Of a DNA stretch of 64,000 bases, positions 9,332 to 20,572 are shown piece after piece. The translations under genes were made by a program, and so were the position numbers. How positions within the stretch are numbered: the first letter of the stretch is position 1; each line of letters begins with the position of its first letter. Under the pieces are notes generated by a model. It was not told the DNA's origin. It worked only from the letters and a program-made list of their open reading frames with translations, and ran no database searches. The stretch is from Monocercomonoides exilis PA203 (taxonomy: Eukaryota > Protista > Preaxostyla): the NCBI GenBank assembly GCA_001643675.2, contig LSRY02000020.1, forward strand, positions 496,001 to 560,000, read 5' to 3'.

Positions 9332-12300
9332 TTACAATTCTTGCTCAATATCTTCGACTTCTGGTTGAGGTGTGTCTGTAGTGTCATCATTGTTCTGAAG
9401 AATTTCATCGTACCCGCCTTCTTCCTGAAGCTTCTTCTTCTTCTTTTCTTCTCTCTTTGCCTTTTCTTTCTTCAGCTTTTCCTTCTCCTTCGCTTTTCTC
9501 TCCTCTCTTTCTCTCCTCTCTTTCTCATATTTCTCTTTCCTTCTCTTTGCATCGCTCTCTTTGATCATATCTTCCGCTCTCTTCTCAATCCTCTGCATCT
9601 CTTCAGTGATATCAGCGCTGGTTTGCCTCAAATCTTCACCAGGCTTAATCGACTTATAGTCAGTCTCCTGCTCCTTCAGCCAGTTCATGCCTTCATCCAA
9701 AACAGCCTCCATCTCATCTGCCTCTGCATCAGTCATCGTGCCAGCCACCACAGCCTCGTCCTGCTTCTCCTTCATCTTCGACACCATGTCCCTGAACTTC
9801 TTCACAGCCATCGGAAACGCACTCCTCTCCTTCAGCTTCAGATCCATCATGTTGCAAGCTTTCTCTGCAACTGACTGCTTCTCCTTCAAAACACCCATCA
9901 CATAATCCATCTCCTTCTGCAGTGCATCGTCGCTGCTGGCTTCTGTCCCAACGGGCTCTCCTTTCTCTTTTTTCTCTCTTTCTTCCTTCAGAATCTTCTC
10001 TCTCATCAAAAGTGGGTCTGTAAGTGAAACACCTTCGTCTTCAAGCCACAATCCAATATCGTTCAGCTCCTTCATCGCATTGTCAATCTGCTCTTCCAAT
10101 GCCAACCCTTTCAGAAGCTCTGCTTTGTGTATGTCAAGCTTCTCCTTCATCTCAAACACATATGACTCCAACCTGTTGCGTGCCTCTGCAATTTTTTCCT
10201 TCTCCTTCTCGTAAATCTCAAACCTCTCCAATCTCTTCTTAGCTGCTTTGATCTGCTTCTTGGTCATTGGGTAGTAGTGATATGAGTCGTCTGGGCGATA
10301 CACAAAGTCATATCTGCAGCCAAACTGACACGATGAAGCAGCTGAGCCTTCTTTCTCTGATGGCTTGTTCTCGTTCTCGCTCTTCTTCTTCTCACACAGC
10401 TCTTTCCACTCATTCGAATCTTCAATATCTTCCTGGCGGTTCAATCTGTGGAGCTCCAACGCCATTCTACGCTTCACATACTTCTTCTTCTTCTTCTTCT
10501 TTTCGGCTTGTTGTGCTTCTTTGTTTGCAGCAGCCTCCTCAACTTTCTTCTCCTCTTTCTTTGCCTTCTCTTCTTCAGCCTCATCATCAAACTTCTCTGT
10601 CTCTTCCTCTTCCTCTGGATTCGGCTTCTTTGCTGCCTGATCGTTTTCTGGCACTTTCTCTCCAACAACGTCGAGTGTCGCCTTCTTCACTCGCAGCACT
10701 CCGTCTCTTCCGATCTCAACCACAACACGCGTTGCCCAATCGACAGTGTTGCTGAACAAGCCAAGAGATGAGCCTGATCCAACAACTTTCACCTTCAGTA
10801 GATTTCCGGTGACGCCAACAGGAACACTTTCTGAGCGGAGCTTCGGGCAGCCACTGCAGTTTGTGTTGGCTTTGTCTTTGTCTTTGCAGCAGCAGCAGCA
10901 CTGGGCATAATCGAATGAGAGGGTGTATGCAGATGTACGTGGAATGATAAGAGTCTTTTTCAGCGGAAGTGTCTCTCCAACACGCACAACAACGGCGTGT
11001 GTGGCATCGTCTGGAATGTACACTCCATCATCGGTGTCCATTCCGCACTCGCCATAAAGAGGCGACTTCTCTGAAGGCAGACGCAGTGATTTGTCGAGTG
11101 CGTTCTTGTCCTCCTCTGGTTTGGCTTCGTTGTTCTTCAGTGTGCCGCCAATGATGTCTCTGATACGCACAACAATCTCGCGCTGAGCACGCTCAACCAG
11201 CTTAACGCCTTTCAGTCTGTATCTCTCCACAAGTGTGGCTGCATACATTGTCGATCCCAATGCAGCAGCTTCGTCGACATTCAGAAGTCTGCCAAGCTCT
11301 GTCTTGTTGAACACAGACAGCGCAATTGATTGCAGCCCTGGAATTCTCATGGAGCCACCCATCATCTGCACTACAACTGATGACAATGGAACTTTTGACT
11401 CGACCTCCCATTCAGGATGTGTCTTGTTCAGAGTCCAGTATTTGGCAACCATCTCTTCGCACAGCAGGCGGAAGCGGTTAAACAAGGGACGCGCGATCTC
11501 TTCCAGTTGCTCTTTCTTGATGCAGAAGTGGAATTCTGGCAGCTCAGGAAGCAAATCATCCAAAGTGCCATGATATTCAGGTGACACTGTAAGCATTTCT
11601 TTTGCACCAGATGCGATTTTCGTGATGTATGGAACGATTGAGGGAGAGTCAAGGAGACGACGGCATTTCGGTCCTGGATACTTCTTCTTCTCTGCCTCTT
11701 CAGCAGAAAGTGGAGGATTCAAAGGTGTTGGCAAAACTCTCTTTCTATGCTTGTGATCTCTTTCCTCATCCAAAGCTTGCTTTTGTTGTTTTTCCTCCTC
11801 TGTATCGAGATATGGTCTGCATTCTCCGTATTTCTCAACTTCTTCAGGTGCAGCTTGTTTGTGGAATTCGCGGATAAGATGATCAGCGATGAGTGCATCA
11901 AACTGCCTTCCTCCAAGTGATTCGTCTGTAACAGTAAGCAGCACATCCATCTTTCCTGTATGCTTTTCTGGGTCAAAGCCTTCGTCCAATGAAAAGCCTT
12001 TCACTTTCTTGCTTTTACCTGCTCCAGCTTTTCTCGATTTGCGGATCGTGCGTATCTCATGAAGCCTCTTCTTTCTCTCCTCACGCAACTTCTTCTTCTT
12101 CTGGCGCTCTTCTTGCTTCTTCATATAAGCCTGAAGATCATCGTTGTTCCTAATGTTGATGGTTTCCGAAACAACCTCTTCCTCTTCATCATCTTCAGCA
12201 ATTTCTCTTTCAAGTCTCTTTCTCTCCTCTCTTTCTTCAGGAGTTTCTGCTGCTAAATCTTCATCATCGTCATCATCGTCATCTTCCTCTTCCTCTTCCT

Positions 12301-13241
12301 CTTCTTTCTTCTTTCTGGCTTCTTCTTCCTCTTTCTTTCTTTTCTCCTCCTCTTCTTTCTTTCTCTTTGCTTCGGCTACTTTTTCTTTCTTTGTTTTTTT
12401 CTCTTCTTTTTCTGTGACATTTGGCTTGGGGAATTCGTATCTCACCAAAGAAATAGATGTTTGGCTTCCTCCCATATCAATAAATACAACATTTCTTGCT
12501 GAGCTTTGCTCTTCTTTTGACTTATCTTCAGCATCTTTTTGCGCAGTTTCATTTACGGGAGCTGCTGCTTCTTCGCTCATTGTTCTGGAACGTTCCATTC
12601 CATATTGATATGCAGCTGCATCATTTGAAGTAATCAATCCCATTACATTCAAATCAGCAATTTTGGCCGCATCAAGAAGAGCTTGACGCTGACTTTGAGT
12701 AAAATAGGCTGGGATGGTAATTACAACATCTTTGATTAAAACATCATTTGATTTATATGTTGTTTGTTGCGCTTGCTGAAGAATAAGAGCAGCAAGATCT
12801 TCAACTGGAATTGGCTCTTCAACATTCGAAGCATTGAAAAGCAGAGTTCCACGTTGCTCATCGAGTTCGTAATGAGGATGAGGATAAGGGTACGCCAGTC
12901 TAGGAGGTAATGAATACCTTCCGAGAAGTTGAATTATGTTGTTTGCAGTCTGTCGAGACTGTCTTGCTGTCTGGAGAAATAAATAGAATTTGTTCAATAT
13001 TCGATATGCTAAAAATTGATCAGACCTTTGATGCTGCACGTACGCCAGCAAATCGTTCAAGTCCATCAATTGTAACCAATGCTGGTGTTATACGCTTCTC
13101 ATTTTCATTCCGAACAACAGTGATCGGTTTCCCGGATTTTAACAGTCCAAATGAAAGGAAATTGGAACCTAAATCGATTCCAATCACATTAGCATAACTG
13201 AAAGAAAGTCCTAGCAAAATTGCCATAAAAAAGACTTTCAT
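9332..13241 (-). CDS. HYOU1: ER luminal Hsp70-family chaperone/nucleotide-exchange factor, GRP170/HYOU1/Lhs1-like; intron 12971-13025
   Basis: Signal peptide MKVFFMAILLGLSFSYA, then VIGIDLGS, ENEKRITP, DVVITIPAYF..SQRQALLDAAKIA, FIDMGG, LGGRQFD, MGGSMRIP, LNVDEAAALG, EARNRLESYVF. The C-terminus is EQEL, a KDEL-like signal. Confidence 0.88.
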
Positions 13242-13603: not shown

Positions 13604-16600
13604 ATGACAGAACAACAAAAAGGTCTTGATCCTAATGCAAATGATACGGTTTCTTTTTTATATTTGCTGCAAATATTTTATTTTTTAATTTTAATCTTTA
13701 TTGCCAATTTTTGATAATTTTTTAACAATTGTTCAAATTTGTTTTGCATTATTGCATTTCGGTGTTCTATTTAGCATTCTAATCAACAATTTGTTCCGTC
13801 ATTGCTTTCAAACACGGATAATCTATTATCATCGGTCGACTCTTCATGTTTGACTTTATTTATGTTTTTCCTCTGATTTCAGCTTTGCTTTTCTACTTGT
13901 GCTAATATATCAATAGATAATGGCCCTTTGTCCCCAATGCAGCGGCAGCAATTGCAATCCGAACTGAAAGTTGCGCAACAACGAATTGCATTAATTCATG
14001 ATCAGCATAAACAACTTCAGCAGCAATTGGATCAACTTGAAGCTGTGAACCAAGGACTTCAACTTCAAAGCCAACAGCAACAGGAACTGCTCCAACAGCA
14101 ATACGAGCAGCAATTACAGCAGTTACAATTACAGATAACTCAATCTCAACTGCCTGCAACAGAACAGCAGCAACAGTTTGCAGTTGGGCAACAGCAGCTT
14201 CAGCTTTCTCTTCTGCAGCAGTTGGAGCAGTTAGAAACGCAATTGCAGCAGCAGATCGCACCACTGCAAGTGCAAGCACAAGAAATCAACCAGCAACAAC
14301 TGCTTCTTGAGCAGCAGCTGCCTCCGCTTCAGCAGTACGAGACTGATGCGCTGCAGCTTCTGGGGCTGAAGACGGCCAGCGAAACACCAACCACACCATC
14401 AATGCCAGACTCAATGACGTCATCTGCATTTGCATCGAGTCTGCAGAAGCTGCAGGCGCTATCTGAGCTGGATGAAGTTGGGTCAGGCACACAGTCGTCA
14501 GAGAGGCTGTCAGTAGAAAGAGATGATGGCAGCAAGGCAGGTGGGAGTGTGTATGCGAATAGAGCAGAACAGCCGCTGGGGCTGAGTGGATTGGCAGATG
14601 ATGATGATGCTGTGGATGGCAAAGGAGGAAGATTTGATAGAGTGAAAGGAGATAAAATAGAGGAAAAGGAAGAAGAGCATTGGCAAGTGAATAAGGAAGA
14701 ATCTGGCGAAGAGCAAGAGAACAGAACAGAAAAAGCAAATGTCAGCTCTTTTGAGGCTGAAAAGAATGAAAAGACGCCTCGATCAGTATCTCCACGCTCT
14801 GACCGATCCAGAACAAAAAGTGAGAAAGATGGCTCAACAAGAGAAACCACTCAAAGCAATCAAAAATCTGAAGGAAAAGTTCCATTGAACGATAATTTTA
14901 TGGATGAAAATGAAAAAGATGAGAAAGCGAAGAATGCAGTAGAACCAAAAAAGCAAAACAGCTCAGAAAAAATTGATCAAAAAAGCAATGAAAAATCTTC
15001 ACTCCGTTCAGAATTGAAGCCAACAGGCAAAGCAAAACAGCAATTAACTCCAAAAACGGAGAAATCAAATAATTTCTCCGATGCTGCCAGCGGAGAAATA
15101 GAAAGTGCAAAGCAAGCACCAAACAAAACACCTTCTGTTAAGAGCTCTTCCTCATCAAAAGCATCCAAATCTAATCAACTTCCACACAACACACTTCACT
15201 CCACTTCAGATCAACACATTCAATCACCTTCTTCTTCCTCATCTTCTTCCTCTTCCTCTTCCTCCTCCTCTTCTTCTTCTTCCTCTTCTTCTTCCTCTTC
15301 TTCAGATTCACGTCATTCAAACTCTCTTTCCTCCACAAGCACCCAAATGAACTCTTTGACATCTTCATCCATCACAAATCCTTCTTCTTCTTCTTCTTCT
15401 TTCTCTTCTTCTTACACAAAACAGCCTGACTCCGCAAACACCTCTTTTCTTTCGAATTCTTCTGTTCAAGAAAGCAATAGCTTACCTCCTTCTTCTTCTT
15501 CTTCTAACACGAAATCATCATCACCACATCGCACTTCGCCTTCCCGCCGCGCCAATCGCACAACACACACATCACCTCAGAAAGAGGACTTATTAAACAA
15601 CCAAAAGGAATTAGAAAAAGATAAAGAAAAAGAAAAAGAAAAAGAAAAAGAAAAAGAAAAAGAAAAAGAAAAAGAAAAAGAAAAAGAAAAAGAAAAAGAA
15701 AAAGAAAAAGAAAAAGAAAAAGATCTTATCAAAAATCGCAAAAGTGACAATACCAATTCCAATATAACTGTTAATGCTAATGCTAATGCTAATGCCACAC
15801 CCAAAGGCAAAAGACACAGCATGCGATCTTCACTGAAGATAGTGGCATACACCCCTGTTCCTGTCACTTCTCATCATCTGTCTCCAAAAGGGGATGAAAT
15901 GCTGTCGCCCACAAGAAAGAATAAAAAGAATAAAAAAAGAAGTAATAAATCAATTAGATCTCCTCATTCGAATGCGAATGCTGCTGTTGAGTCAGGATTG
16001 CCTCGTTCTTCTTCAGAAGAGGAGGAGAAAGATGGTTCTGTTTCAAACACAAATGAAACAAAAGAAGGCAAAAAAGGAGGAGGTGAATTTCAAGGGATGC
16101 AGCTGGGTGATTGTGATGCGACGGGAGATAATGAAGACGGGAAGTGGATATTGGATGAGCTGCAAGAAGCAGAAGGACAAAAAGAGAAAGAAAAAGAGAA
16201 AGAGAAAGAGAAAGAACTTCAATCAGAACAATATCAGAACAGTTCATTTGATGACAGATACGACACAGAAATGCACTCCACACAGCACTCACTGCAGCAG
16301 TCTCAATCTCATCTTCTATCTAATTCTCAATCTAATCCTCATTCACAGCCAGCTGATCAGCCACGCACACTCACAGCAATGCGCATGTCTTCCAGTTCAA
16401 TTGGCTCTTCCTCTTCTCTTTTGACTCAACACAGCAGTTCGAATTCTTCTAAGCATCGCACATCTTCCTCTTCCTCCTCTTCCTCCTCTTCCTCCTCTGC
16501 TTCTTCTTCTCTTCCCCCTCGTTCCTCCTCTCCTCTTTCTCCTCTTTCTCCTCATTCTCCATTGGGCTCTTCTCCAAACAGATCTTCCCTCTTCACTGCC

Positions 16601-18457
16601 TCTCGCTCCACCCGCCCTTCCAACACATCCTCCACACGCAGCCCGTACCTCTCTCGTGTTGTGCCTGTCAAATCACCAAAGATGAAGAAGAATCCTGTTA
16701 ATTCTTCTTCTTCTGGTGCTTCTTCGTCTTCTTCTGGTTCTTCTTCTTCTTCTTCATCTTCTCCTTCTCCTCTTCCTTCATCAGGAGCCATCGACCAAAG
16801 AGAACGTCGTTCTGATTCCTTCAAACAGCGCAATTCAGAGAAAGATAAAGAAAGAGAAAGAGAAAGAGAAAAAGAAAAAGAGAGAGAAAGAGAAGAAGAG
16901 CGCTGGCGAGAGCGAGAAAACGGGTGGAACTCCTCCACTTTCCCTACTGCCAGTGCAGAAGGCAGAGCAATGCCACCTGTCCGCTCGTCATTCACACTGG
17001 GCAGTATGCACAGGGCAGACTCAGCCGGCTTTTCGTTCTATTCATCAACGGCATGCAACCAGGGGCAGTTTGGTTCCTCTTCTAATTCTGCTAATGCTTC
17101 TTGTTATGGTGGTGGTGGAGGAGGAAGTGGTGGAGGAAGTGGAAGCATCCAACAGACAGAACAACAGCCAAAGTATCGTTCACAGACATCGCTTTCACAG
17201 CGCTATGGGAAGAGCAACAAGCAGAGAAGAATCGGAAAAAGGAAAGGGAAAAGCAGAGAAAACAAGGAAAAAGGAGAAAGAGAAGGGGAAGGGGAAGGAG
17301 AGGGTGAAGGGGAAGGAGGGGAATATGAAGATGGTGAACAAGTGTGGGAGCTGCCTGACGACAGAAATGTGAAGCTGCCTTCGTGTTCTCAGTCGTCTCG
17401 TGTCTGCACTCCTTCTTCTTCTTCCTCTTCCTCTTCCTTCTCTCCTTCTTCTTCTCCTCACTCCTCTGCCTCTCATCTTCCCCCTCTCCGTTCCACTTCT
17501 TCAATGGCAGCTGCGCCAAGCCACTACAGAACACGCCCATCCACCAGACAGGCATCCACTCAGGGAAGAACATTGACTCCTCCTTCTTCTTCTATCTCCC
17601 CTCCTCTTCTGGCTTCGTCTTCTTCTCCTCCTCTTCCTTCTTATCCTTCTTCTTCTTCTTCTTCTTCTTCTTCTTCTTCTCAATATTCCGCCTACCCTCT
17701 CCTTCAGCAGCGCCGCAGTCAGTTGTATTCCTCCCTGGGCACCCAGCGCACATCTGCCACGTTGTCGTCCGTGTCGATGCAGAAAGAGCAGATGCTGCTG
17801 TCTGCACTGGAGGCCGAGCGAGAGAGGCAGAGGCTGAGAAAGAGGCTGGTGAAGCTGCAGGTGGAGGACGAGCGGGTGTCTGCGTCGATTGGCGTGTGCG
17901 AGAGCCAGTGGAAGGACATCACACAGAAGAGGATGGAGATCAGGAAGGAAAGGAGCAAAGTGATGGATGGGAAGAGGGCGTATCTGCAGCAGAAGGAGCA
18001 GGAGGTGCGGAATATTCAGAGAAAAAGAGAGGAAGACAGACAGAGGGCGCTGGCTGAGCAGGAGCGGGCGCAGCAGATGAAGCAGGAGCAGCGGACGCAG
18101 CTGCGGAGCGAGCTGAGGAGAGCGGAGGAGGAGAAGAGGAGGAAAGGGGAAAAAGATCTGAATGAGAAGAGGAGGCAGAAGGAGATGATAAGTGAGGAGA
18201 AGAGGGAGGCGAGGGAGAGGATTGCAGAGCATAAGCAAAGGGTGATTCTGCAGGCGCTGGAAGGCAAAGAAGAGGAACGGCTGCTGTTGGAGGAGAAGAA
18301 GAGGGAGATCGATGAAGAGGTGGCGTATCTGCTGATGATGACGAGGGAGATGGAGGAGAAAGTGAATAAAAAGCAGAAAGAAGAAGAGAGAATCAAAGAA
18401 AGGCTGGTTGATGTCAAAGGAACAGCGTATCGAACACCGCGTGCTCGGCATAAGTGA
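13604..18457 (+). CDS. Large low-complexity protein: N-terminal Gln-rich coiled coil, Ser-rich disordered middle, C-terminal charged coiled coil; function unknown
   Basis: 1509-aa ORF, plus two short upstream exons starting at ATG 13604 (MTEQQKGLDPNANDT) with GT-AG boundaries. No recognisable globular domain. Confidence 0.65.
15623..15722 (+). repeat. Perfect (AAAGAA)n hexamer microsatellite encoding (KE)n
   Basis: About 16 uninterrupted units, directly visible. Confidence 0.95.
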
Positions 18458-18533: not shown

Positions 18534-19261
18534 TGAAATCAGATGGGCTATATTTTGATTAATTTTATCTGGTTTATAATGTTTCAGTTGATTGAAGAGA
18601 TTAATTGCTGCTTCAAAAAACATTGTATGTATGTTGTGTGTTTTTCTGAAAGCATTCAGATGTTTGTGTTGAATTCATAGTAATTTTTTATTATTTTTTA
18701 TTTTTTATTGGAATTTTTATTTATTCTTATAAATTTCACGTGATTCGCATTGTTTCGTTTGTCTCTTGTTTTTCATCTAAATATTTTCTCAATTTTGCTC
18801 AACCTTAATTGGAGATTAAAGCAATCTTCAATCCACTTTTCAGCATCTGCCAAATATTATGAAATTTTTCAGTTATTAACGTTGAGCAATCCTTCTCCAT
18901 TTTTCTCTTGTTAACGATTTTTACAATGTTTTTTATGTAGATAAAGCAGAATTCGAGGAATCACACTTCTTTCGTTCTTGAATGACAAGATACGTATTAT
19001 CTTTTTGCAAAAAAGTTTTTATTGGTTGAATTAAAAAAACACCATAAATTATTTATTATTTATGATTATTAAGTCAATTACACAGCTCAAAAACGTGAAT
19101 GGGTCAAAAAACGTTGAAAATAAAAAGTGAAAAAAAAAATTCAATCAGCAACGAATATTAATTGGTCGATTGATGATTATTTTCATCGGAAAACATCCGA
19201 AACAAATCTCTCTTCACTATTAAATGGGTCAATAGGAAGACTTCATAACAACAACGCAAAT

Positions 19262-20572
19262 TTAGCAAGGAGGGAACATTCCAAATCTTCTCCACATCTT
19301 CCATGGTCTGTGATGCATCATCATCATTTCTTCAAAGTTCATTTCAGGGGGGCATGGAGGGCATGGAGGGCATGGAGGACAAGGTGGGCACGGTTTGCAG
19401 CAGCAGCATGGAGGCTTGCAGGGACCGCATGGACCGCATGGACCGCATGGACCGCATGGACCGCATGGACCGCATGGACCGCATGGACCACAGGGACCAC
19501 AGGGACCACAGGGACCACAGGGACCACAGGGACCACAGGGTGGGCATGGCATGCCAAATGGTGGCTTGCATGGTCCGAAAGGCTCAAAAGGTGGGCATGG
19601 AGGATGAGGCTTGCAACAGCAGCATGGAGGTTTGCATGGTCCGCAGGGTCCACATGGAGGGCATGGTGGGCAAGGCTTGCACGGTCCACATGGTCCAGGT
19701 GGGCATGGTTTGCAACAGCAGCATGGAGGCTTGCATGGTCCACATGGTTCACAAGGAGGGAAAGGCTTGCATGGTCCACATGGAGGGCAAGGGCATGGAG
19801 GCATGCAACAGCATTTTCCACCGCAGCAAGGTTTCTCGCAAGGCTTCTCGGGGCATGGTCCTTTGCATGGACCGCATGGACCGCATGGTCCACATGGTCC
19901 GCAAGATTCTCCACATGGCTTGGTGCACATCTTATGTGCAAGATAACGACGAATCATCCTTCTCTTGTACCACAAAGCGGTATTGCATGGGAATGGGCAA
20001 GATGGATCACAGCCATCAGGTCCGCAGCATCCTGGACCGCATTTGCATTTATCGCAGCACTTCTTCTTGCAACACTCTTCCTTGCAGCATTCTTCTTTGC
20101 AGCATTTGTCTTTGCAACATTTATCTTTGCATCCGCAGCAGCAATCCTTCTTGCAGCATTCTTCGTCGCATTCTTTTTTCTCACATTTTTCCGAAGAGCA
20201 AGAAGATGACGATGCGGAGCATGAATCTTTTTCTTGGCATCCGCAATCGCATTTTCCTTTGCATGGTTTTGTGCATTTACCCTCACAATCGCATTTGCCC
20301 TTGCATTTGCTATCGCAACAGCATGTCAAAAATATGGTCAAAAGCTTCTTCTCCTTAAACAAATCCATTGCAACTTCAATATCGTTTGAAGTCTTAATTG
20401 TAACAAAATCGCTCTCGCAATCAACATATGTCAGGCAAATTTTCTCCGGTTCTTCAACACCATAAAACTCCGAAATCATTGCACGAAGCTCTTCAATTGT
20501 TGGGGGCTTCTCAACAAGGGTGCGACGAATATCGAAAGTTTTAGTGCAGATAAATTTCAATCCAAAAGACAT
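19262..20572 (-). CDS. PB1-domain protein with metallothionein-like Cys-rich region and Pro/Cys/Gly repeats; intronless
   Basis: The first ~83 aa form a PB1 domain (LKF...DIRR; [25 protein letters not shown]-like motif). They are followed by CC/CxC/CCC clusters, three [12 protein letters not shown] modules and (GPC)13. Confidence 0.85.
19422..19538. repeat. 9-bp tandem repeat: 7x GGACCGCAT followed by 6x GGACCACAG, encoding the Cys-Gly-Pro repeat on the minus strand
   Basis: Two homogeneous blocks of 9-mers, directly visible. Confidence 0.92.

What the first reader, a model, noticed from the sequence alone, without database searches (positions are those of the whole stretch)
19262..20572. 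PB1 domain fused to a metallothionein-like tail with ~105 Cys: candidate self-polymerising metal/thiol sink
Seen: about 105 of 436 residues are Cys (hand count). The order is PB1; a CC/CxC/CCC-K/E/D block like a metallothionein ([12 protein letters not shown]); a basic-aromatic linker ([14 protein letters not shown]); Pro-Cys repeats with three [12 protein letters not shown] modules; and a Met/His/aromatic end. There is no signal peptide and no ZZ or UBA domain. Established: PB1 domains that have both the N-terminal Lys/Arg cluster (LKF..DIRR) and the acidic OPCA motif (DCESD...D) can polymerise head-to-tail, as in p62/SQSTM1. Inference: a cytosolic filament or condensate presenting a very dense thiol array for metal (Zn/Cu/Cd or Fe-S) storage or oxidant buffering in an anaerobe. 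Alternatively it is a disulfide-crosslinked structural fibre. I do not recognise this architecture from described proteins; it is the top candidate for a new system here.
Basis: partly seen in the sequence, partly recalled or inferred. Interest (0 to 1): 0.82.

Follow-up and report, generated by a model that had tools for sequence, protein, structure and literature searches.

The report
PB1 domain fused to hyper-cysteine tail
A gut flagellate that has no mitochondria (Monocercomonoides exilis) encodes a protein whose self-associating PB1 head carries a tail that is about 29% cysteine; the design is conserved in related oxymonads, is not described in any paper I could search, and is most likely a polymer-forming metal- or thiol-binding scaffold, though its chemistry and expression are untested.

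Summary

Residues 1-83 are a real PB1 domain. It passes the Pfam cut-off, gives an AF2 model of pLDDT 87, and best matches the PB1 folds of NBR1, p40phox, PKC-zeta and p62. It has both the basic and the acidic (OPCA) interaction faces.

The genome is Monocercomonoides exilis. All six PB1 domains detectable in it belong to one oxymonad family: N-terminal PB1, a short Cys patch, a basic/aromatic helix, a low-complexity tail rich in Cys, His or Met, and a 'PW..RR.GF' motif near the end.

The hyper-Cys member has an ortholog in a metagenome contig (348 aa, 20% Cys, same module order). A Streblomastix ortholog is cut off by its contig end, and a Blattamonas PB1 protein shares the plan. No PB1 protein outside this group shows this Cys level.

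The tail matches no metallothionein, keratin-associated or collagen family at threshold.

My best reading (about 0.4) is a PB1-polymerised thiolate array that binds metals. Rivals are a redox buffer, a cross-linked fibre and a generic condensate scaffold.

The scan had not noted this before.

The parts
19262..20572 (-). Complete coding sequence, 436 codons plus TAA stop, no intron needed
   Evidence: ORF list and translation. The start Met coincides with the start of all orthologs and paralogs. CDS GC is 50% against 28% in both flanks.
20324..20572 (-). PB1 domain (residues 1-83), type A/B: K6, R16, R17 and OPCA Y49-D51-E53-D55-D64
   Evidence: Pfam PF00564, E 4.2e-7, above cut-off. AF2 pLDDT 87 with beta-beta-alpha-beta-beta-alpha-beta topology. 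Foldseek top hits are the PB1 domains of NBR1, p40phox, PKC-zeta, p62 and AtNBR1. OPCA aligned to Cdc24.
19982..20323 (-). Cys block A (residues 84-197): CC/CCC/CxC separated by Lys/Glu/Asp, including pentads of the CCK-x-x type
   Evidence: 38 Cys, 24 Lys, 0 Arg, 0 Leu/Ile/Val and 1 aromatic residue in 114 residues. The same (CCKEK)n block occurs in ortholog L017. AF2 pLDDT is below 50. Only a sub-threshold Keratin_B2_2 match, 18.5 bits against a cut-off of 27.
19925..19981 (-). Conserved basic/aromatic helix (residues 198-216), family motif W.KR.M.+RY...K(M/F)
   Evidence: Predicted helix 198-215. Y210 and K214 are invariant across 7 family members from 3 or more taxa. The motif is found in the paralogs and in the Blattamonas and metagenome proteins.
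19349..19924 (-). Pro/Cys block B (residues 217-408): CGP, CPP and KPPCCCCKP units
   Evidence: 62 Cys, 73 Pro, 29 Gly and 0 Arg in 192 residues. The protein has 35 CxxC spacings in all. AF2 pLDDT is below 50.
19418..19534 (-). 9-bp tandem array encoding (CGP)13, made of two sub-arrays that differ only at synonymous positions
   Evidence: TRF gives period 9, 13 copies, 97% matches.
19706..19741 (-). [12 protein letters not shown] module 1 (residues 278-289)
   Evidence: It differs from modules 2 and 3 by synonymous changes only.
19607..19642 (-). [12 protein letters not shown] module 2 (residues 311-322)
19391..19426 (-). [12 protein letters not shown] module 3 (residues 383-394)
19265..19348 (-). 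C-terminal Met/His/aromatic end (residues 409-436) with the family motif PW.MWRRFG
   Evidence: Predicted helices 413-419 and 421-429. The motif is shared with the Blattamonas paralogs (PWMFRRGGFG) and, displaced, with L017.
19049..19061 (-). Cluster of AAATAA/AATAAA poly(A)-signal-like hexamers about 200 nt after the stop codon
   Evidence: These are the two signals reported for M. exilis 3'UTRs, whose mean length is 312 bp (PMC8767320).

Best explanation
This is a real, conserved gene of Monocercomonoides exilis for a cytosolic two-part protein.

Shown:
- The N-terminal PB1 domain has both the basic and the acidic interaction faces.
- All PB1 domains detectable in the genome sit in six related genes.
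- The tail is predicted to be unstructured on its own. It consists of a Lys/Glu-spaced CC/CCC block and a Pro/Gly-spaced CxxC and CCCC block, separated and capped by two short conserved helices.

Inferred:
- The PB1 heads chain head to tail with themselves or with the five paralogs, as the PB1 domains of p62, plant NBR1 and TFG do. This would align many tails side by side.
- The roughly 100 thiolates per chain then coordinate soft or borderline metal ions (Zn, Cu(I), Cd, possibly Fe). The assembly would work as a polymeric, high-capacity metallothionein-like store or sink.
- The 3-residue CGP and CPP repeats, if they adopt a polyproline-II conformation, would place their Cys along one edge. 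That favours bridging between neighbouring tails.
For: - Gene reality and conservation: the PB1 frame is the conserved one. A complete ortholog on metagenome contig L017 is 53% identical overall, has 70 Cys in 348 aa and keeps the same module order. Streblomastix KAA6394159.1 is 54% identical in the PB1 domain, and its tail starts with CC, CxC and CGP units before the contig ends. The clade has 90/85 support.
- Selection in this reading frame: the three 12-residue modules and the 24 CGP units differ only synonymously. This is partly an ascertainment effect, because the units were chosen by their peptide sequence.
- Constraint on tails in the family: tails of the paralog trio have dN/dS of 0.17-0.56, similar to their PB1 domains.
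- PB1 type A/B.
- Only six PB1 genes in the genome, all in this family, so any PB1 partner must be a family member.
- Metal reading, block A: 33% Cys in CC/CCC/CxC clusters, Lys 24 against Arg 0, and almost no aromatic or aliphatic residues. These are the features listed for Tetrahymena subfamily 7a Cd/Zn metallothioneins, including the Lys-over-Arg asymmetry and growth by module repeats (PMC1808422).
- Metal reading, paralogs: their tails are enriched in the other metal ligands, His and Met.
- Disorder: the tail is modelled without structure, as expected of a thionein without metal.
- Genome context: no phytochelatin synthase, eukaryote-type glutamate-cysteine ligase or vertebrate- or plant-type metallothionein was detected. 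These are weak negatives.
Against: - There is no experimental or transcript evidence.
- The exact protein is not in the 15-billion-protein collection, so it may be unannotated or modelled differently.
- No curated metallothionein family matches. At 436 aa with a folded domain, it is far from the metallothionein definition.
- Cys content is not uniform in the clade. The metagenome relative P0004 has 6.5% Cys and Blattamonas P0007 has 6.9%. The tail chemistry is therefore evolutionarily labile, which fits a generic low-complexity role as well.
- Part of the Cys count comes from a young slippage array.
- Block B resembles structural Cys/Pro proteins more than metallothioneins.
Confidence: 0.4

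Rival explanations
1. Cross-linked structural fibre. PB1 polymerisation aligns rigid Pro/Cys rods, which are locked together by disulfides or by Zn bridges. The result would be a cytoskeletal element of the flagellar apparatus, axostyle or preaxostyle, analogous to the sperm-tail Cys-Gly-Pro proteins and the high-sulfur keratin-associated proteins. One variant is that the uninterrupted (Gly-Pro-Cys)13 run forms a collagen-like triple helix.
For: - There are 24 CGP units. The Drosophila Mst(3)CGP family is defined by the same repeat, and its deletion disturbs axoneme assembly (PMC10645079).
- The only Pfam similarities of the tail are Keratin_B2_2 and Collagen, both below cut-off.
- (GPC)13 aligns in register with the (GPT)n collagen-like region of BclA.
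- Block B is 38% Pro, which favours extended rods.
- The family is restricted to oxymonads, which have lineage-specific cytoskeletal structures.
Against: - The organism is an anaerobe or microaerophile with a reducing cytosol, and the protein has no secretory signal, so stable disulfides are unlikely.
- The Lys/Glu-rich block A is unlike keratin-associated proteins.
- The family matches are compositional and below threshold.
- Clade members with Gly/Arg-rich, low-Cys tails (P0004) could not cross-link in the same way.
Confidence: 0.2
2. Protein-based redox buffer. The many CxxC pairs, including tandem overlapping CGPC (the thioredoxin active-site tetrapeptide), cycle between dithiol and disulfide. 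They would absorb oxidants during transient O2 exposure and be re-reduced by the expanded thioredoxin system, in a cell that appears to lack glutathione.
For: - There are 35 CxxC spacings and 24 CGP units, giving runs of CGPC.
- CGPC is the conserved thioredoxin motif (abstracts listed).
- M. exilis is proposed to use cysteine as its main low-molecular-weight thiol and has an expanded thioredoxin family (PMC6759080).
- No glutamate-cysteine ligase was detected (a weak negative).
Against: - Block A is dominated by adjacent CC and CCC clusters, whose vicinal disulfides are strained. This fits metal clusters better than redox cycling.
- A stoichiometric buffer needs high abundance, and abundance is unknown.
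- The His-rich and Gly/Arg-rich relatives cannot serve this role.
Confidence: 0.15
3. Generic PB1-driven condensate or adaptor scaffold of the p62, NBR1 or TFG kind. Function would reside in the PB1 head and the two short conserved helices, which would be binding motifs. The tail would only need to be disordered and 'sticky', and its cysteine richness would be a drifting by-product of repeat slippage.
For: - All six paralogs share the PB1 domain and the motifs but have very different tail compositions.
- The tail composition changes within the query's own clade.
- The (CGP)13 array is a young slippage product.
- ATG8 genes are present, but no NBR1 FW domain was found in the genome, so an autophagy-receptor role is vacant.
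- TFG, p62 and NBR1 PB1 domains are among the nearest solved relatives.
Against: - A tail of 20-29% Cys with the same block order is kept in at least two, and probably three, oxymonad lineages.
- Arg is totally excluded from 306 tail residues, and Leu/Ile/Val are absent. This argues for selection on chemistry, not only on disorder.
- No ZZ, UBA or clear LIR motif was found.
Confidence: 0.15
4. Not a functional protein: a chance or decaying ORF over a GC-rich minisatellite.
For: - The exact sequence is absent from the protein collection.
- Five of the six reading frames are open over the repeat.
- No transcript evidence was obtained.
Against: - The PB1 domain is intact and above the Pfam threshold, in frame with the whole tail.
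- Orthologs with the same start, motifs and module order exist in other oxymonads.
- Repeat variants differ only synonymously.
- Poly(A) signals and an AT-rich flank lie where expected.
Confidence: 0.05

Closest known systems
p62/SQSTM1 and plant NBR1 (PB1-polymerising autophagy receptors)
   Same: Both have an N-terminal type A/B PB1 domain with the beta-1 Lys, the beta-2 'IRR' and an OPCA motif. Their PB1 structures and filaments (2bkf, 4uf8, 6tgy, 6tgn) are among the best fold matches.
   Different: The query has no ZZ, FW or UBA domain and no evident LIR. The rest of the protein is a hyper-Cys low-complexity tail instead of cargo- and ATG8-binding modules.
TFG (Trk-fused gene protein): N-terminal PB1, then coiled coil, then a Pro/Gln-rich disordered tail
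   Same: The overall plan matches: a PB1 head followed by a long Pro-rich low-complexity tail. TFG PB1 (9e7c) is a significant profile hit. That TFG assembles through its PB1 and coiled coil is from my own knowledge.
   Different: The query has no coiled coil, and its tail chemistry is Cys/Pro/Lys rather than Pro/Gln. TFG orthology was not tested and is unlikely, given the lineage-specific motifs.
Ciliate (Tetrahymena) subfamily 7a metallothioneins
   Same: Both have very high Cys in CC and CCC clusters, strong Lys-over-Arg asymmetry, few aromatic or aliphatic residues, unusual length for a metallothionein, and growth by internal module duplication (PMC1808422).
   Different: There is no sequence-family match. 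The query tail is 353 aa, is fused to a folded PB1 domain, is half Pro/Gly-spaced, and contains two conserved helices. Metal binding is untested.
Mst(3)CGP sperm-tail proteins of Drosophila, and high-sulfur keratin-associated proteins
   Same: Both have repetitive Cys-Gly-Pro units (PMC10645079). The Keratin_B2_2 similarity is compositional only.
   Different: Those proteins are small and have no PB1 domain. The Pfam match is below cut-off. They act in oxidising or maturing structures, not in an anaerobe's cytosol. Homology is not supported.
Oxymonad PB1 proteins annotated only as hypothetical or 'PB1 domain-containing' (M. exilis MONOS_245/225/7200/1366; Blattamonas KAK2949585.1 and KAK2961517.1 with paralogs; Streblomastix KAA6394159.1)
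   Same: This is the true family of the query. Members share the PB1 domain, a Cys patch, the basic/aromatic helix, a low-complexity tail and the PW..RR.GF motif.
   Different: The query and L017 are the extreme Cys/Pro members (24% and 20% Cys). The others carry 0.6-7% Cys, with His, Gly, Arg, Met or Ser enrichment.

Membership tests
PB1 domain (Pfam PF00564) | Profile match above the curated cut-off | tested here: met
   30.3 bits against a cut-off of 23.6, residues 14-82. The genome-frame match scores 33.8 bits.
PB1 domain (Pfam PF00564) | Ubiquitin-like beta-grasp fold, beta-beta-alpha-beta-beta-alpha-beta | tested here: met
   AF2 pLDDT 87 with strands and helices in that order. Foldseek probability is 1.00 to the PB1 domains of NBR1, p40phox, PKC-zeta and p62, with TM 0.7-0.8.
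PB1 domain, type A/B (able to chain head to tail) | Conserved Lys on beta-1 plus basic residues on beta-2, and an OPCA acidic motif | tested here: met
   K6 is invariant in the family. R16 and R17 lie in 'DIRR'. Y49, D51, E53, D55 and D64 align with the Cdc24 OPCA; one canonical acidic position is Cys52.
PB1 domain, type A/B (able to chain head to tail) | Actual homo- or hetero-oligomerisation | not testable with these tools
   This needs SEC-MALS or EM of the recombinant domain, with K6/R16/R17 and D51/E53/D55 mutants.
p62/SQSTM1-NBR1 autophagy receptors | ZZ zinc finger, UBA domain, and (for NBR1) the FW domain | tested here: not met
   No such Pfam hits at E up to 1 in the query or the paralogs. 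No FW domain anywhere in the genome.
p62/SQSTM1-NBR1 autophagy receptors | ATG8-interacting LIR/AIM motif | tested here: inconclusive
   By eye there is no canonical acidic [WFY]xx[LIV] motif. The tail has no Leu/Ile/Val at all. No dedicated predictor was available.
Metallothionein (superfamily definition) | 15-30% Cys arranged as CC, CxC and CxxC, with few aromatic residues or His | tested here: met
   The tail is 28.9% Cys. Blocks A and B together have 5 aromatic residues and 1 His in 306 residues.
Metallothionein (superfamily definition) | Small size and no other folded domain | tested here: not met
   The protein is 436 aa with a folded PB1 domain. The longest Tetrahymena metallothioneins cited are 162 aa (PMC1808422).
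Metallothionein (superfamily definition) | Match to a curated metallothionein sequence family | tested here: not met
   No metallothionein family was found with thresholds of E up to 1 (whole protein) and up to 10 (isolated blocks); HMMER's speed filters drop most matches above about E 0.1, so the effective screen is tighter.
Metallothionein (superfamily definition) | Metal-thiolate clusters | not testable with these tools
   This needs ICP-MS, ESI-MS and UV/CD of recombinant protein.
High-sulfur keratin-associated proteins (PF13885) | Profile match above cut-off | tested here: not met
   18.5 bits against a cut-off of 27, on block A only.
Collagen-like triple-helix repeat (PF01391) | Profile match above cut-off, with long uninterrupted Gly-X-Y | tested here: not met
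   15.0-17.7 bits against a cut-off of 27.2. The Gly-X-Y register holds for only 13 triplets, residues 346-384.
Oxymonad PB1 low-complexity-tail family (defined here) | N-terminal PB1, plus a basic/aromatic helix with invariant Tyr and Lys, plus PW..RR.GF near the C-end | tested here: met
   The alignment of 7 members has Y210 and K214 invariant. Motif scan. The clade with Streblomastix, L017 and P0004 has 90/85 support.

The most novel reading that the evidence does not exclude
The six PB1 proteins of M. exilis co-polymerise through their type A/B PB1 heads into one cytosolic filament or condensate. Its mixed Cys-, His- and Met-rich tails would form the cell's main metal and thiol reservoir. 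This would be a polymeric, metallothionein-like organelle substitute in a eukaryote that has no mitochondria, no detectable glutathione synthesis and a cytosolic SUF Fe-S pathway. It might buffer or hand over Fe, Zn or Cu.
Probability: 0.15. Interest if true: 0.85.

Novelty: new variant of a known kind. Interest (0 to 1): 0.62.

Why it matters
PB1 domains are known as polymerisation and adaptor modules. Metallothionein-like and high-sulfur tails are known as small free-standing proteins. A conserved fusion of the two has not been described in anything I could search.

If the PB1 head really templates a filament that displays about 100 thiols per subunit, it would be a new way to build a high-capacity metal or redox store. 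It would sit in the model organism for life without mitochondria, where metal, Fe-S and thiol homeostasis are open questions.

The hypothesis is directly testable: the gene is intronless, small and expressible. The locus also seems to be missing from, or mis-modelled in, the public protein set. That is a practical annotation point for oxymonad genomes, where low-complexity genes break assemblies; the Streblomastix ortholog ends at a contig end.

Tried and rejected
- Word-index protein search of residues 1-90 found nothing.
- The same search with the whole protein gave 40 hits. All were (CGP)n low-complexity matches in unrelated, mostly bacterial proteins, and none had a PB1 domain.
- The ESM Atlas feature search of the tail gave no usable hit.
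- The first metagenome scan with a 10-sequence alignment failed for lack of a conserved stretch. A 3-sequence alignment then worked.
- Synteny gave nothing: the neighbours of the Blattamonas and metagenome relatives are unrelated to the window's neighbours.
- PDB sequence searches of the tail gave no hit for block A and only compositional hits for block B (BclA, AKAP14, collagen peptides).
- I considered and rejected a secreted or membrane protein, because there is no hydrophobic segment.
- I rejected an upstream exon, because the orthologs start at the same Met.
- I rejected the ORFs in other frames as repeat artefacts.
- An animal-type metal-response element (MRE core TGCRCNC) in the 527-bp upstream region was absent. 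It would not be expected to apply in this organism anyway.
- Literature searches for PB1 with cysteine-rich or metallothionein, and for PB1, NBR1, glutathione or metallothionein in the oxymonad genome papers, found nothing relevant.
Full report
**Observation**

Window 19262-20572 on the minus strand is an uninterrupted ORF from ATG to TAA, 436 codons long. Long ORFs in the same window contain about 0.8% Cys.

- PB1, residues 1-83.
- Block A, residues 84-197: 38 Cys, 24 Lys, no Arg, no Leu/Ile/Val, one aromatic residue.
- A basic/aromatic stretch, residues 198-216.
- Block B, residues 217-408: 62 Cys, 73 Pro, 29 Gly, no Arg.
- A Met/His/aromatic end, residues 409-436.

Block B holds three exact [12 protein letters not shown] modules and 24 CGP units. 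Thirteen of those units form a 9-bp tandem array at 19418-19534. Several other frames are open over the same DNA, but that is a by-product of the repeat.

**Organism and gene context**

The assembly has 82.3 Mb in 101 contigs. A paralog is identical to M. exilis protein KAH7827901.1 (MONOS_245), on a contig of the same length as G000:C5. The genome is therefore Monocercomonoides exilis, the long-read assembly of PMC8767320.

The CDS is 50% GC between flanks of 28% GC. A cluster of AAATAA/AATAAA hexamers lies about 200 nt after the stop. Those are the two poly(A) signals reported for this species, whose 3'UTRs average 312 bp and 26% GC. Neighbouring ORFs are uninformative: a huge low-complexity ORF, an unassigned ORF and an Hsp70-like ORF.

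The exact 436-aa sequence is not in the 15-billion-protein collection, and no M. exilis model for it appeared in any protein search. It is probably unannotated or modelled differently, but I could not check the GenBank record itself.

**The head is a PB1 domain of the chain-forming type**

- Pfam PB1 scores 30.3 bits against a cut-off of 23.6.
- An AF2 model of residues 1-92, built on the paralog alignment, has pLDDT 87 and the beta-beta-alpha-beta-beta-alpha-beta order.
- Foldseek ranks the PB1 domains of NBR1, p40phox, PKC-zeta, p62 and Arabidopsis NBR1 first, including p62 and AtNBR1 filament structures.
- The family profile hits the PB1 domains of Cdc24, PKC-zeta, NBR1, TFG and p62 in the PDB.
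- The beta-1 Lys (K6) is invariant in the family, and 'DIRR' supplies R16 and R17.
- The OPCA stretch Y49-D51-E53-D55...D64 aligns with the Cdc24 OPCA; one canonical acidic position is Cys52.

Both interaction faces are therefore present. That is the prerequisite for head-to-tail chains, but not proof of them.

**It belongs to a lineage-specific family**

Six places in the genome match PB1, whether searched with the Pfam model or with the family's own profile. All six are N-terminal domains of intron-free ORFs with odd tails:
- the query;
- a near-identical trio, MONOS_245/225/7200, with Cys/His/Arg/Met-rich tails;
- MONOS_1366, with a His/Pro/Ser tail;
- a 680-aa Ser/Met/Phe-rich protein.

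An exhaustive profile search of 1.84 billion representative proteins gave 1095 PB1 hits. The nearest are oxymonad proteins:
- Streblomastix strix KAA6394159.1;
- Blattamonas nauphoetae KAK2949585.1;
- a six-member Blattamonas cluster around KAK2961517.1;
- unnamed metagenome proteins.

Members share five parts in the same order: PB1; a short Cys patch; a basic/aromatic motif of the form W.KR.M.+RY...K(M/F), with invariant Tyr and Lys; a low-complexity tail; and PW.M(W/F)RR.GF near the C-end. AF2 models them as the only helices in an otherwise unstructured tail: 198-215, and 413-419 with 421-429. The rest of the tail has pLDDT below 50.

**The hyper-Cys version is conserved**

- A PB1 tree groups the query with Streblomastix KAA6394159.1, metagenome protein P0004 and a new locus, L017, with 90/85 support.
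- L017 is JGI contig Ga0307335_105890, found by a metagenome scan. It encodes a complete 348-aa protein that is 53% identical overall, with 70 Cys (20%; 26% in the tail).
- L017 keeps the same order: PB1, a run of CCKEK pentads, the basic/aromatic helix, then a Pro/Cys block with a CGP run and CC/CCC clusters.
- The Streblomastix protein is 54% identical in the PB1 domain. Its tail begins with CC, CxC and CGP units, but it is cut off at residue 119 by the end of its contig.
- Blattamonas KAK2949585.1 has a C-K-E/D block and the helix, but only 6.9% Cys. P0004 has 6.5%.

The architecture is therefore old within oxymonads, while the degree of Cys enrichment varies. Among the 150 best PB1 hits, only the Streblomastix fragment exceeds 8% Cys. 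A whole-protein word search returned only unrelated (CGP)n low-complexity proteins without a PB1 domain. Literature searches found no PB1-metallothionein or PB1-Cys-rich fusion, and no mention of PB1 in the two oxymonad comparative-genomics papers searched for it.

**Evidence that the tail is translated and constrained**

- It lies in frame with the PB1 domain and contains the two family motifs.
- The three 12-residue modules differ at 3-4 nucleotide positions each, all synonymous. The 24 CGP units use nine nucleotide versions. This is partly ascertainment, because the units were picked by their peptide sequence.
- The (CGP)13 array consists of two sub-arrays with different synonymous codons. 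It is therefore a young slippage product, and its copy number may be unstable.
- In the paralog trio, tail dN/dS is 0.17-0.56, similar to the PB1 domain.

Direct expression evidence is missing. 

**What the tail is like, and what it is not**

It matches no curated family:
- No metallothionein family is hit, even at lenient thresholds.
- Keratin_B2_2 scores 18.5 bits against a cut-off of 27.
- Collagen scores 15-17.7 bits against a cut-off of 27.2.

PDB sequence hits are compositional. (GPC)13 aligns with the (GPT)n collagen-like region of BclA, and there is a Pro/Ala repeat match in AKAP14.

By composition, block A has the features listed for Tetrahymena subfamily 7a metallothioneins: CC and CCC clusters, many Lys but no Arg, few aromatic or aliphatic residues, and growth by module repetition (PMC1808422). 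Block B is closer to structural Cys/Pro proteins. The Cys-Gly-Pro repeat defines the Drosophila Mst(3)CGP sperm-tail family (PMC10645079). Its tandem units also generate overlapping CGPC, the thioredoxin active-site tetrapeptide (abstracts).

**Cellular context**

M. exilis is proposed to use cysteine as its main low-molecular-weight thiol and has an expanded thioredoxin family (PMC6759080). I found:
- no eukaryote-type glutamate-cysteine ligase, phytochelatin synthase, or vertebrate- or plant-type metallothionein;
- no NBR1 FW domain;
- several ATG8 matches;
- weak ferritin-like matches.

The negatives are weak. The control genomes are prokaryotic, and introns split the matches.

**Mechanism**

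Shown:
- a type A/B PB1 head;
- a genome in which the only PB1 partners are family members;
- a conserved, disordered tail with about 29% Cys.

Inferred:
- The heads form homo- or hetero-polymers, as the PB1 domains of p62, plant NBR1 and TFG do. This would align the tails.
- The thiolates bind metal ions. In my own structural reasoning, the 3-residue CGP and CPP repeats, if in a polyproline-II conformation with three residues per turn, put their Cys on one edge. That favours bridges between neighbouring tails.

I put about 0.4 on this polymeric metal-binding reading. Three things favour it: the metallothionein-like block A, the enrichment of the other metal ligands (His, Met) in the sister tails, and the reducing cytosol, which argues against stable disulfides.

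The rivals are:
- a cross-linked cytoskeletal fibre (0.2);
- a CxxC redox buffer (0.15);
- a generic condensate or adaptor scaffold whose tail chemistry drifts (0.15);
- a non-functional ORF (0.05).

The metal and redox readings are not mutually exclusive.

**Verdict**

The gene is a real, conserved and apparently undescribed architecture: a new variant built from known kinds of parts. It is restricted, as far as the searches show, to oxymonads. Function, oligomerisation and expression all remain to be tested.

Noticed in passing
L003:1468-2910:+ (G000:C19), L015:2816-4858:- (G000:C5), L004:1489-2580:+, L005:775-1848:-, L008:1492-2583:+: These are the five other PB1 genes of the genome. All have an N-terminal type A/B PB1 domain and a low-complexity tail. 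One tail is His/Pro/Ser-rich with HSPHS repeats (MONOS_1366). One belongs to a 680-aa Ser/Met/Phe-rich protein that is not in the protein collection. Three are near-identical Cys/His/Arg/Met-rich copies (MONOS_245/225/7200) with tail dN/dS of 0.17-0.56.
   Followed up: partly
Proteins P0160, P0166, P0173, P0176, P0180, P0185, P0186: Several are bacterial-looking proteins with a cytochrome P460 domain (PF16694; not recorded for P0160). They carry long N-terminal runs of CNPC, CGPC and CSPC triplet repeats (9-17% Cys). This is an unexplained Cys-x-Pro repeat array in front of a haem domain.
   Followed up: no
G000 genome-wide: At least eight ATG8-like matches were found, but no NBR1 FW domain. 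No ZZ or UBA domain is found in any PB1 protein. If M. exilis has a PB1-type selective-autophagy receptor, it must be one of these divergent family members.
   Followed up: no
window 13928-18457 (+): This 1509-codon ORF has extreme low complexity: poly-Ser, (EK)n, Gln-rich and Glu/Arg/Lys-rich coiled-coil-like segments. It lies directly next to the finding. Its only Pfam hit, SR-25, is below cut-off.
   Followed up: partly
P0027 (Blattamonas KAK2951330.1, 1068 aa): This protein is annotated as VPS45 but begins with a family-type PB1 domain at residues 1-88. It may be a fused gene model or a real PB1-Sec1 fusion.
   Followed up: no
L016 (Streblomastix SNRW01002024.1, end of contig): The Streblomastix ortholog is cut off at residue 119 by the contig end, just as the Cys-rich repeats start. 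This suggests that such genes break short-read assemblies and are under-represented in oxymonad proteomes.
   Followed up: partly
window 9332-13069 (-): A 1245-codon ORF has an Hsp70-family match (E 9e-30) covering only part of the profile. It may be a long, atypical Hsp70/Hsp110-like protein.
   Followed up: no
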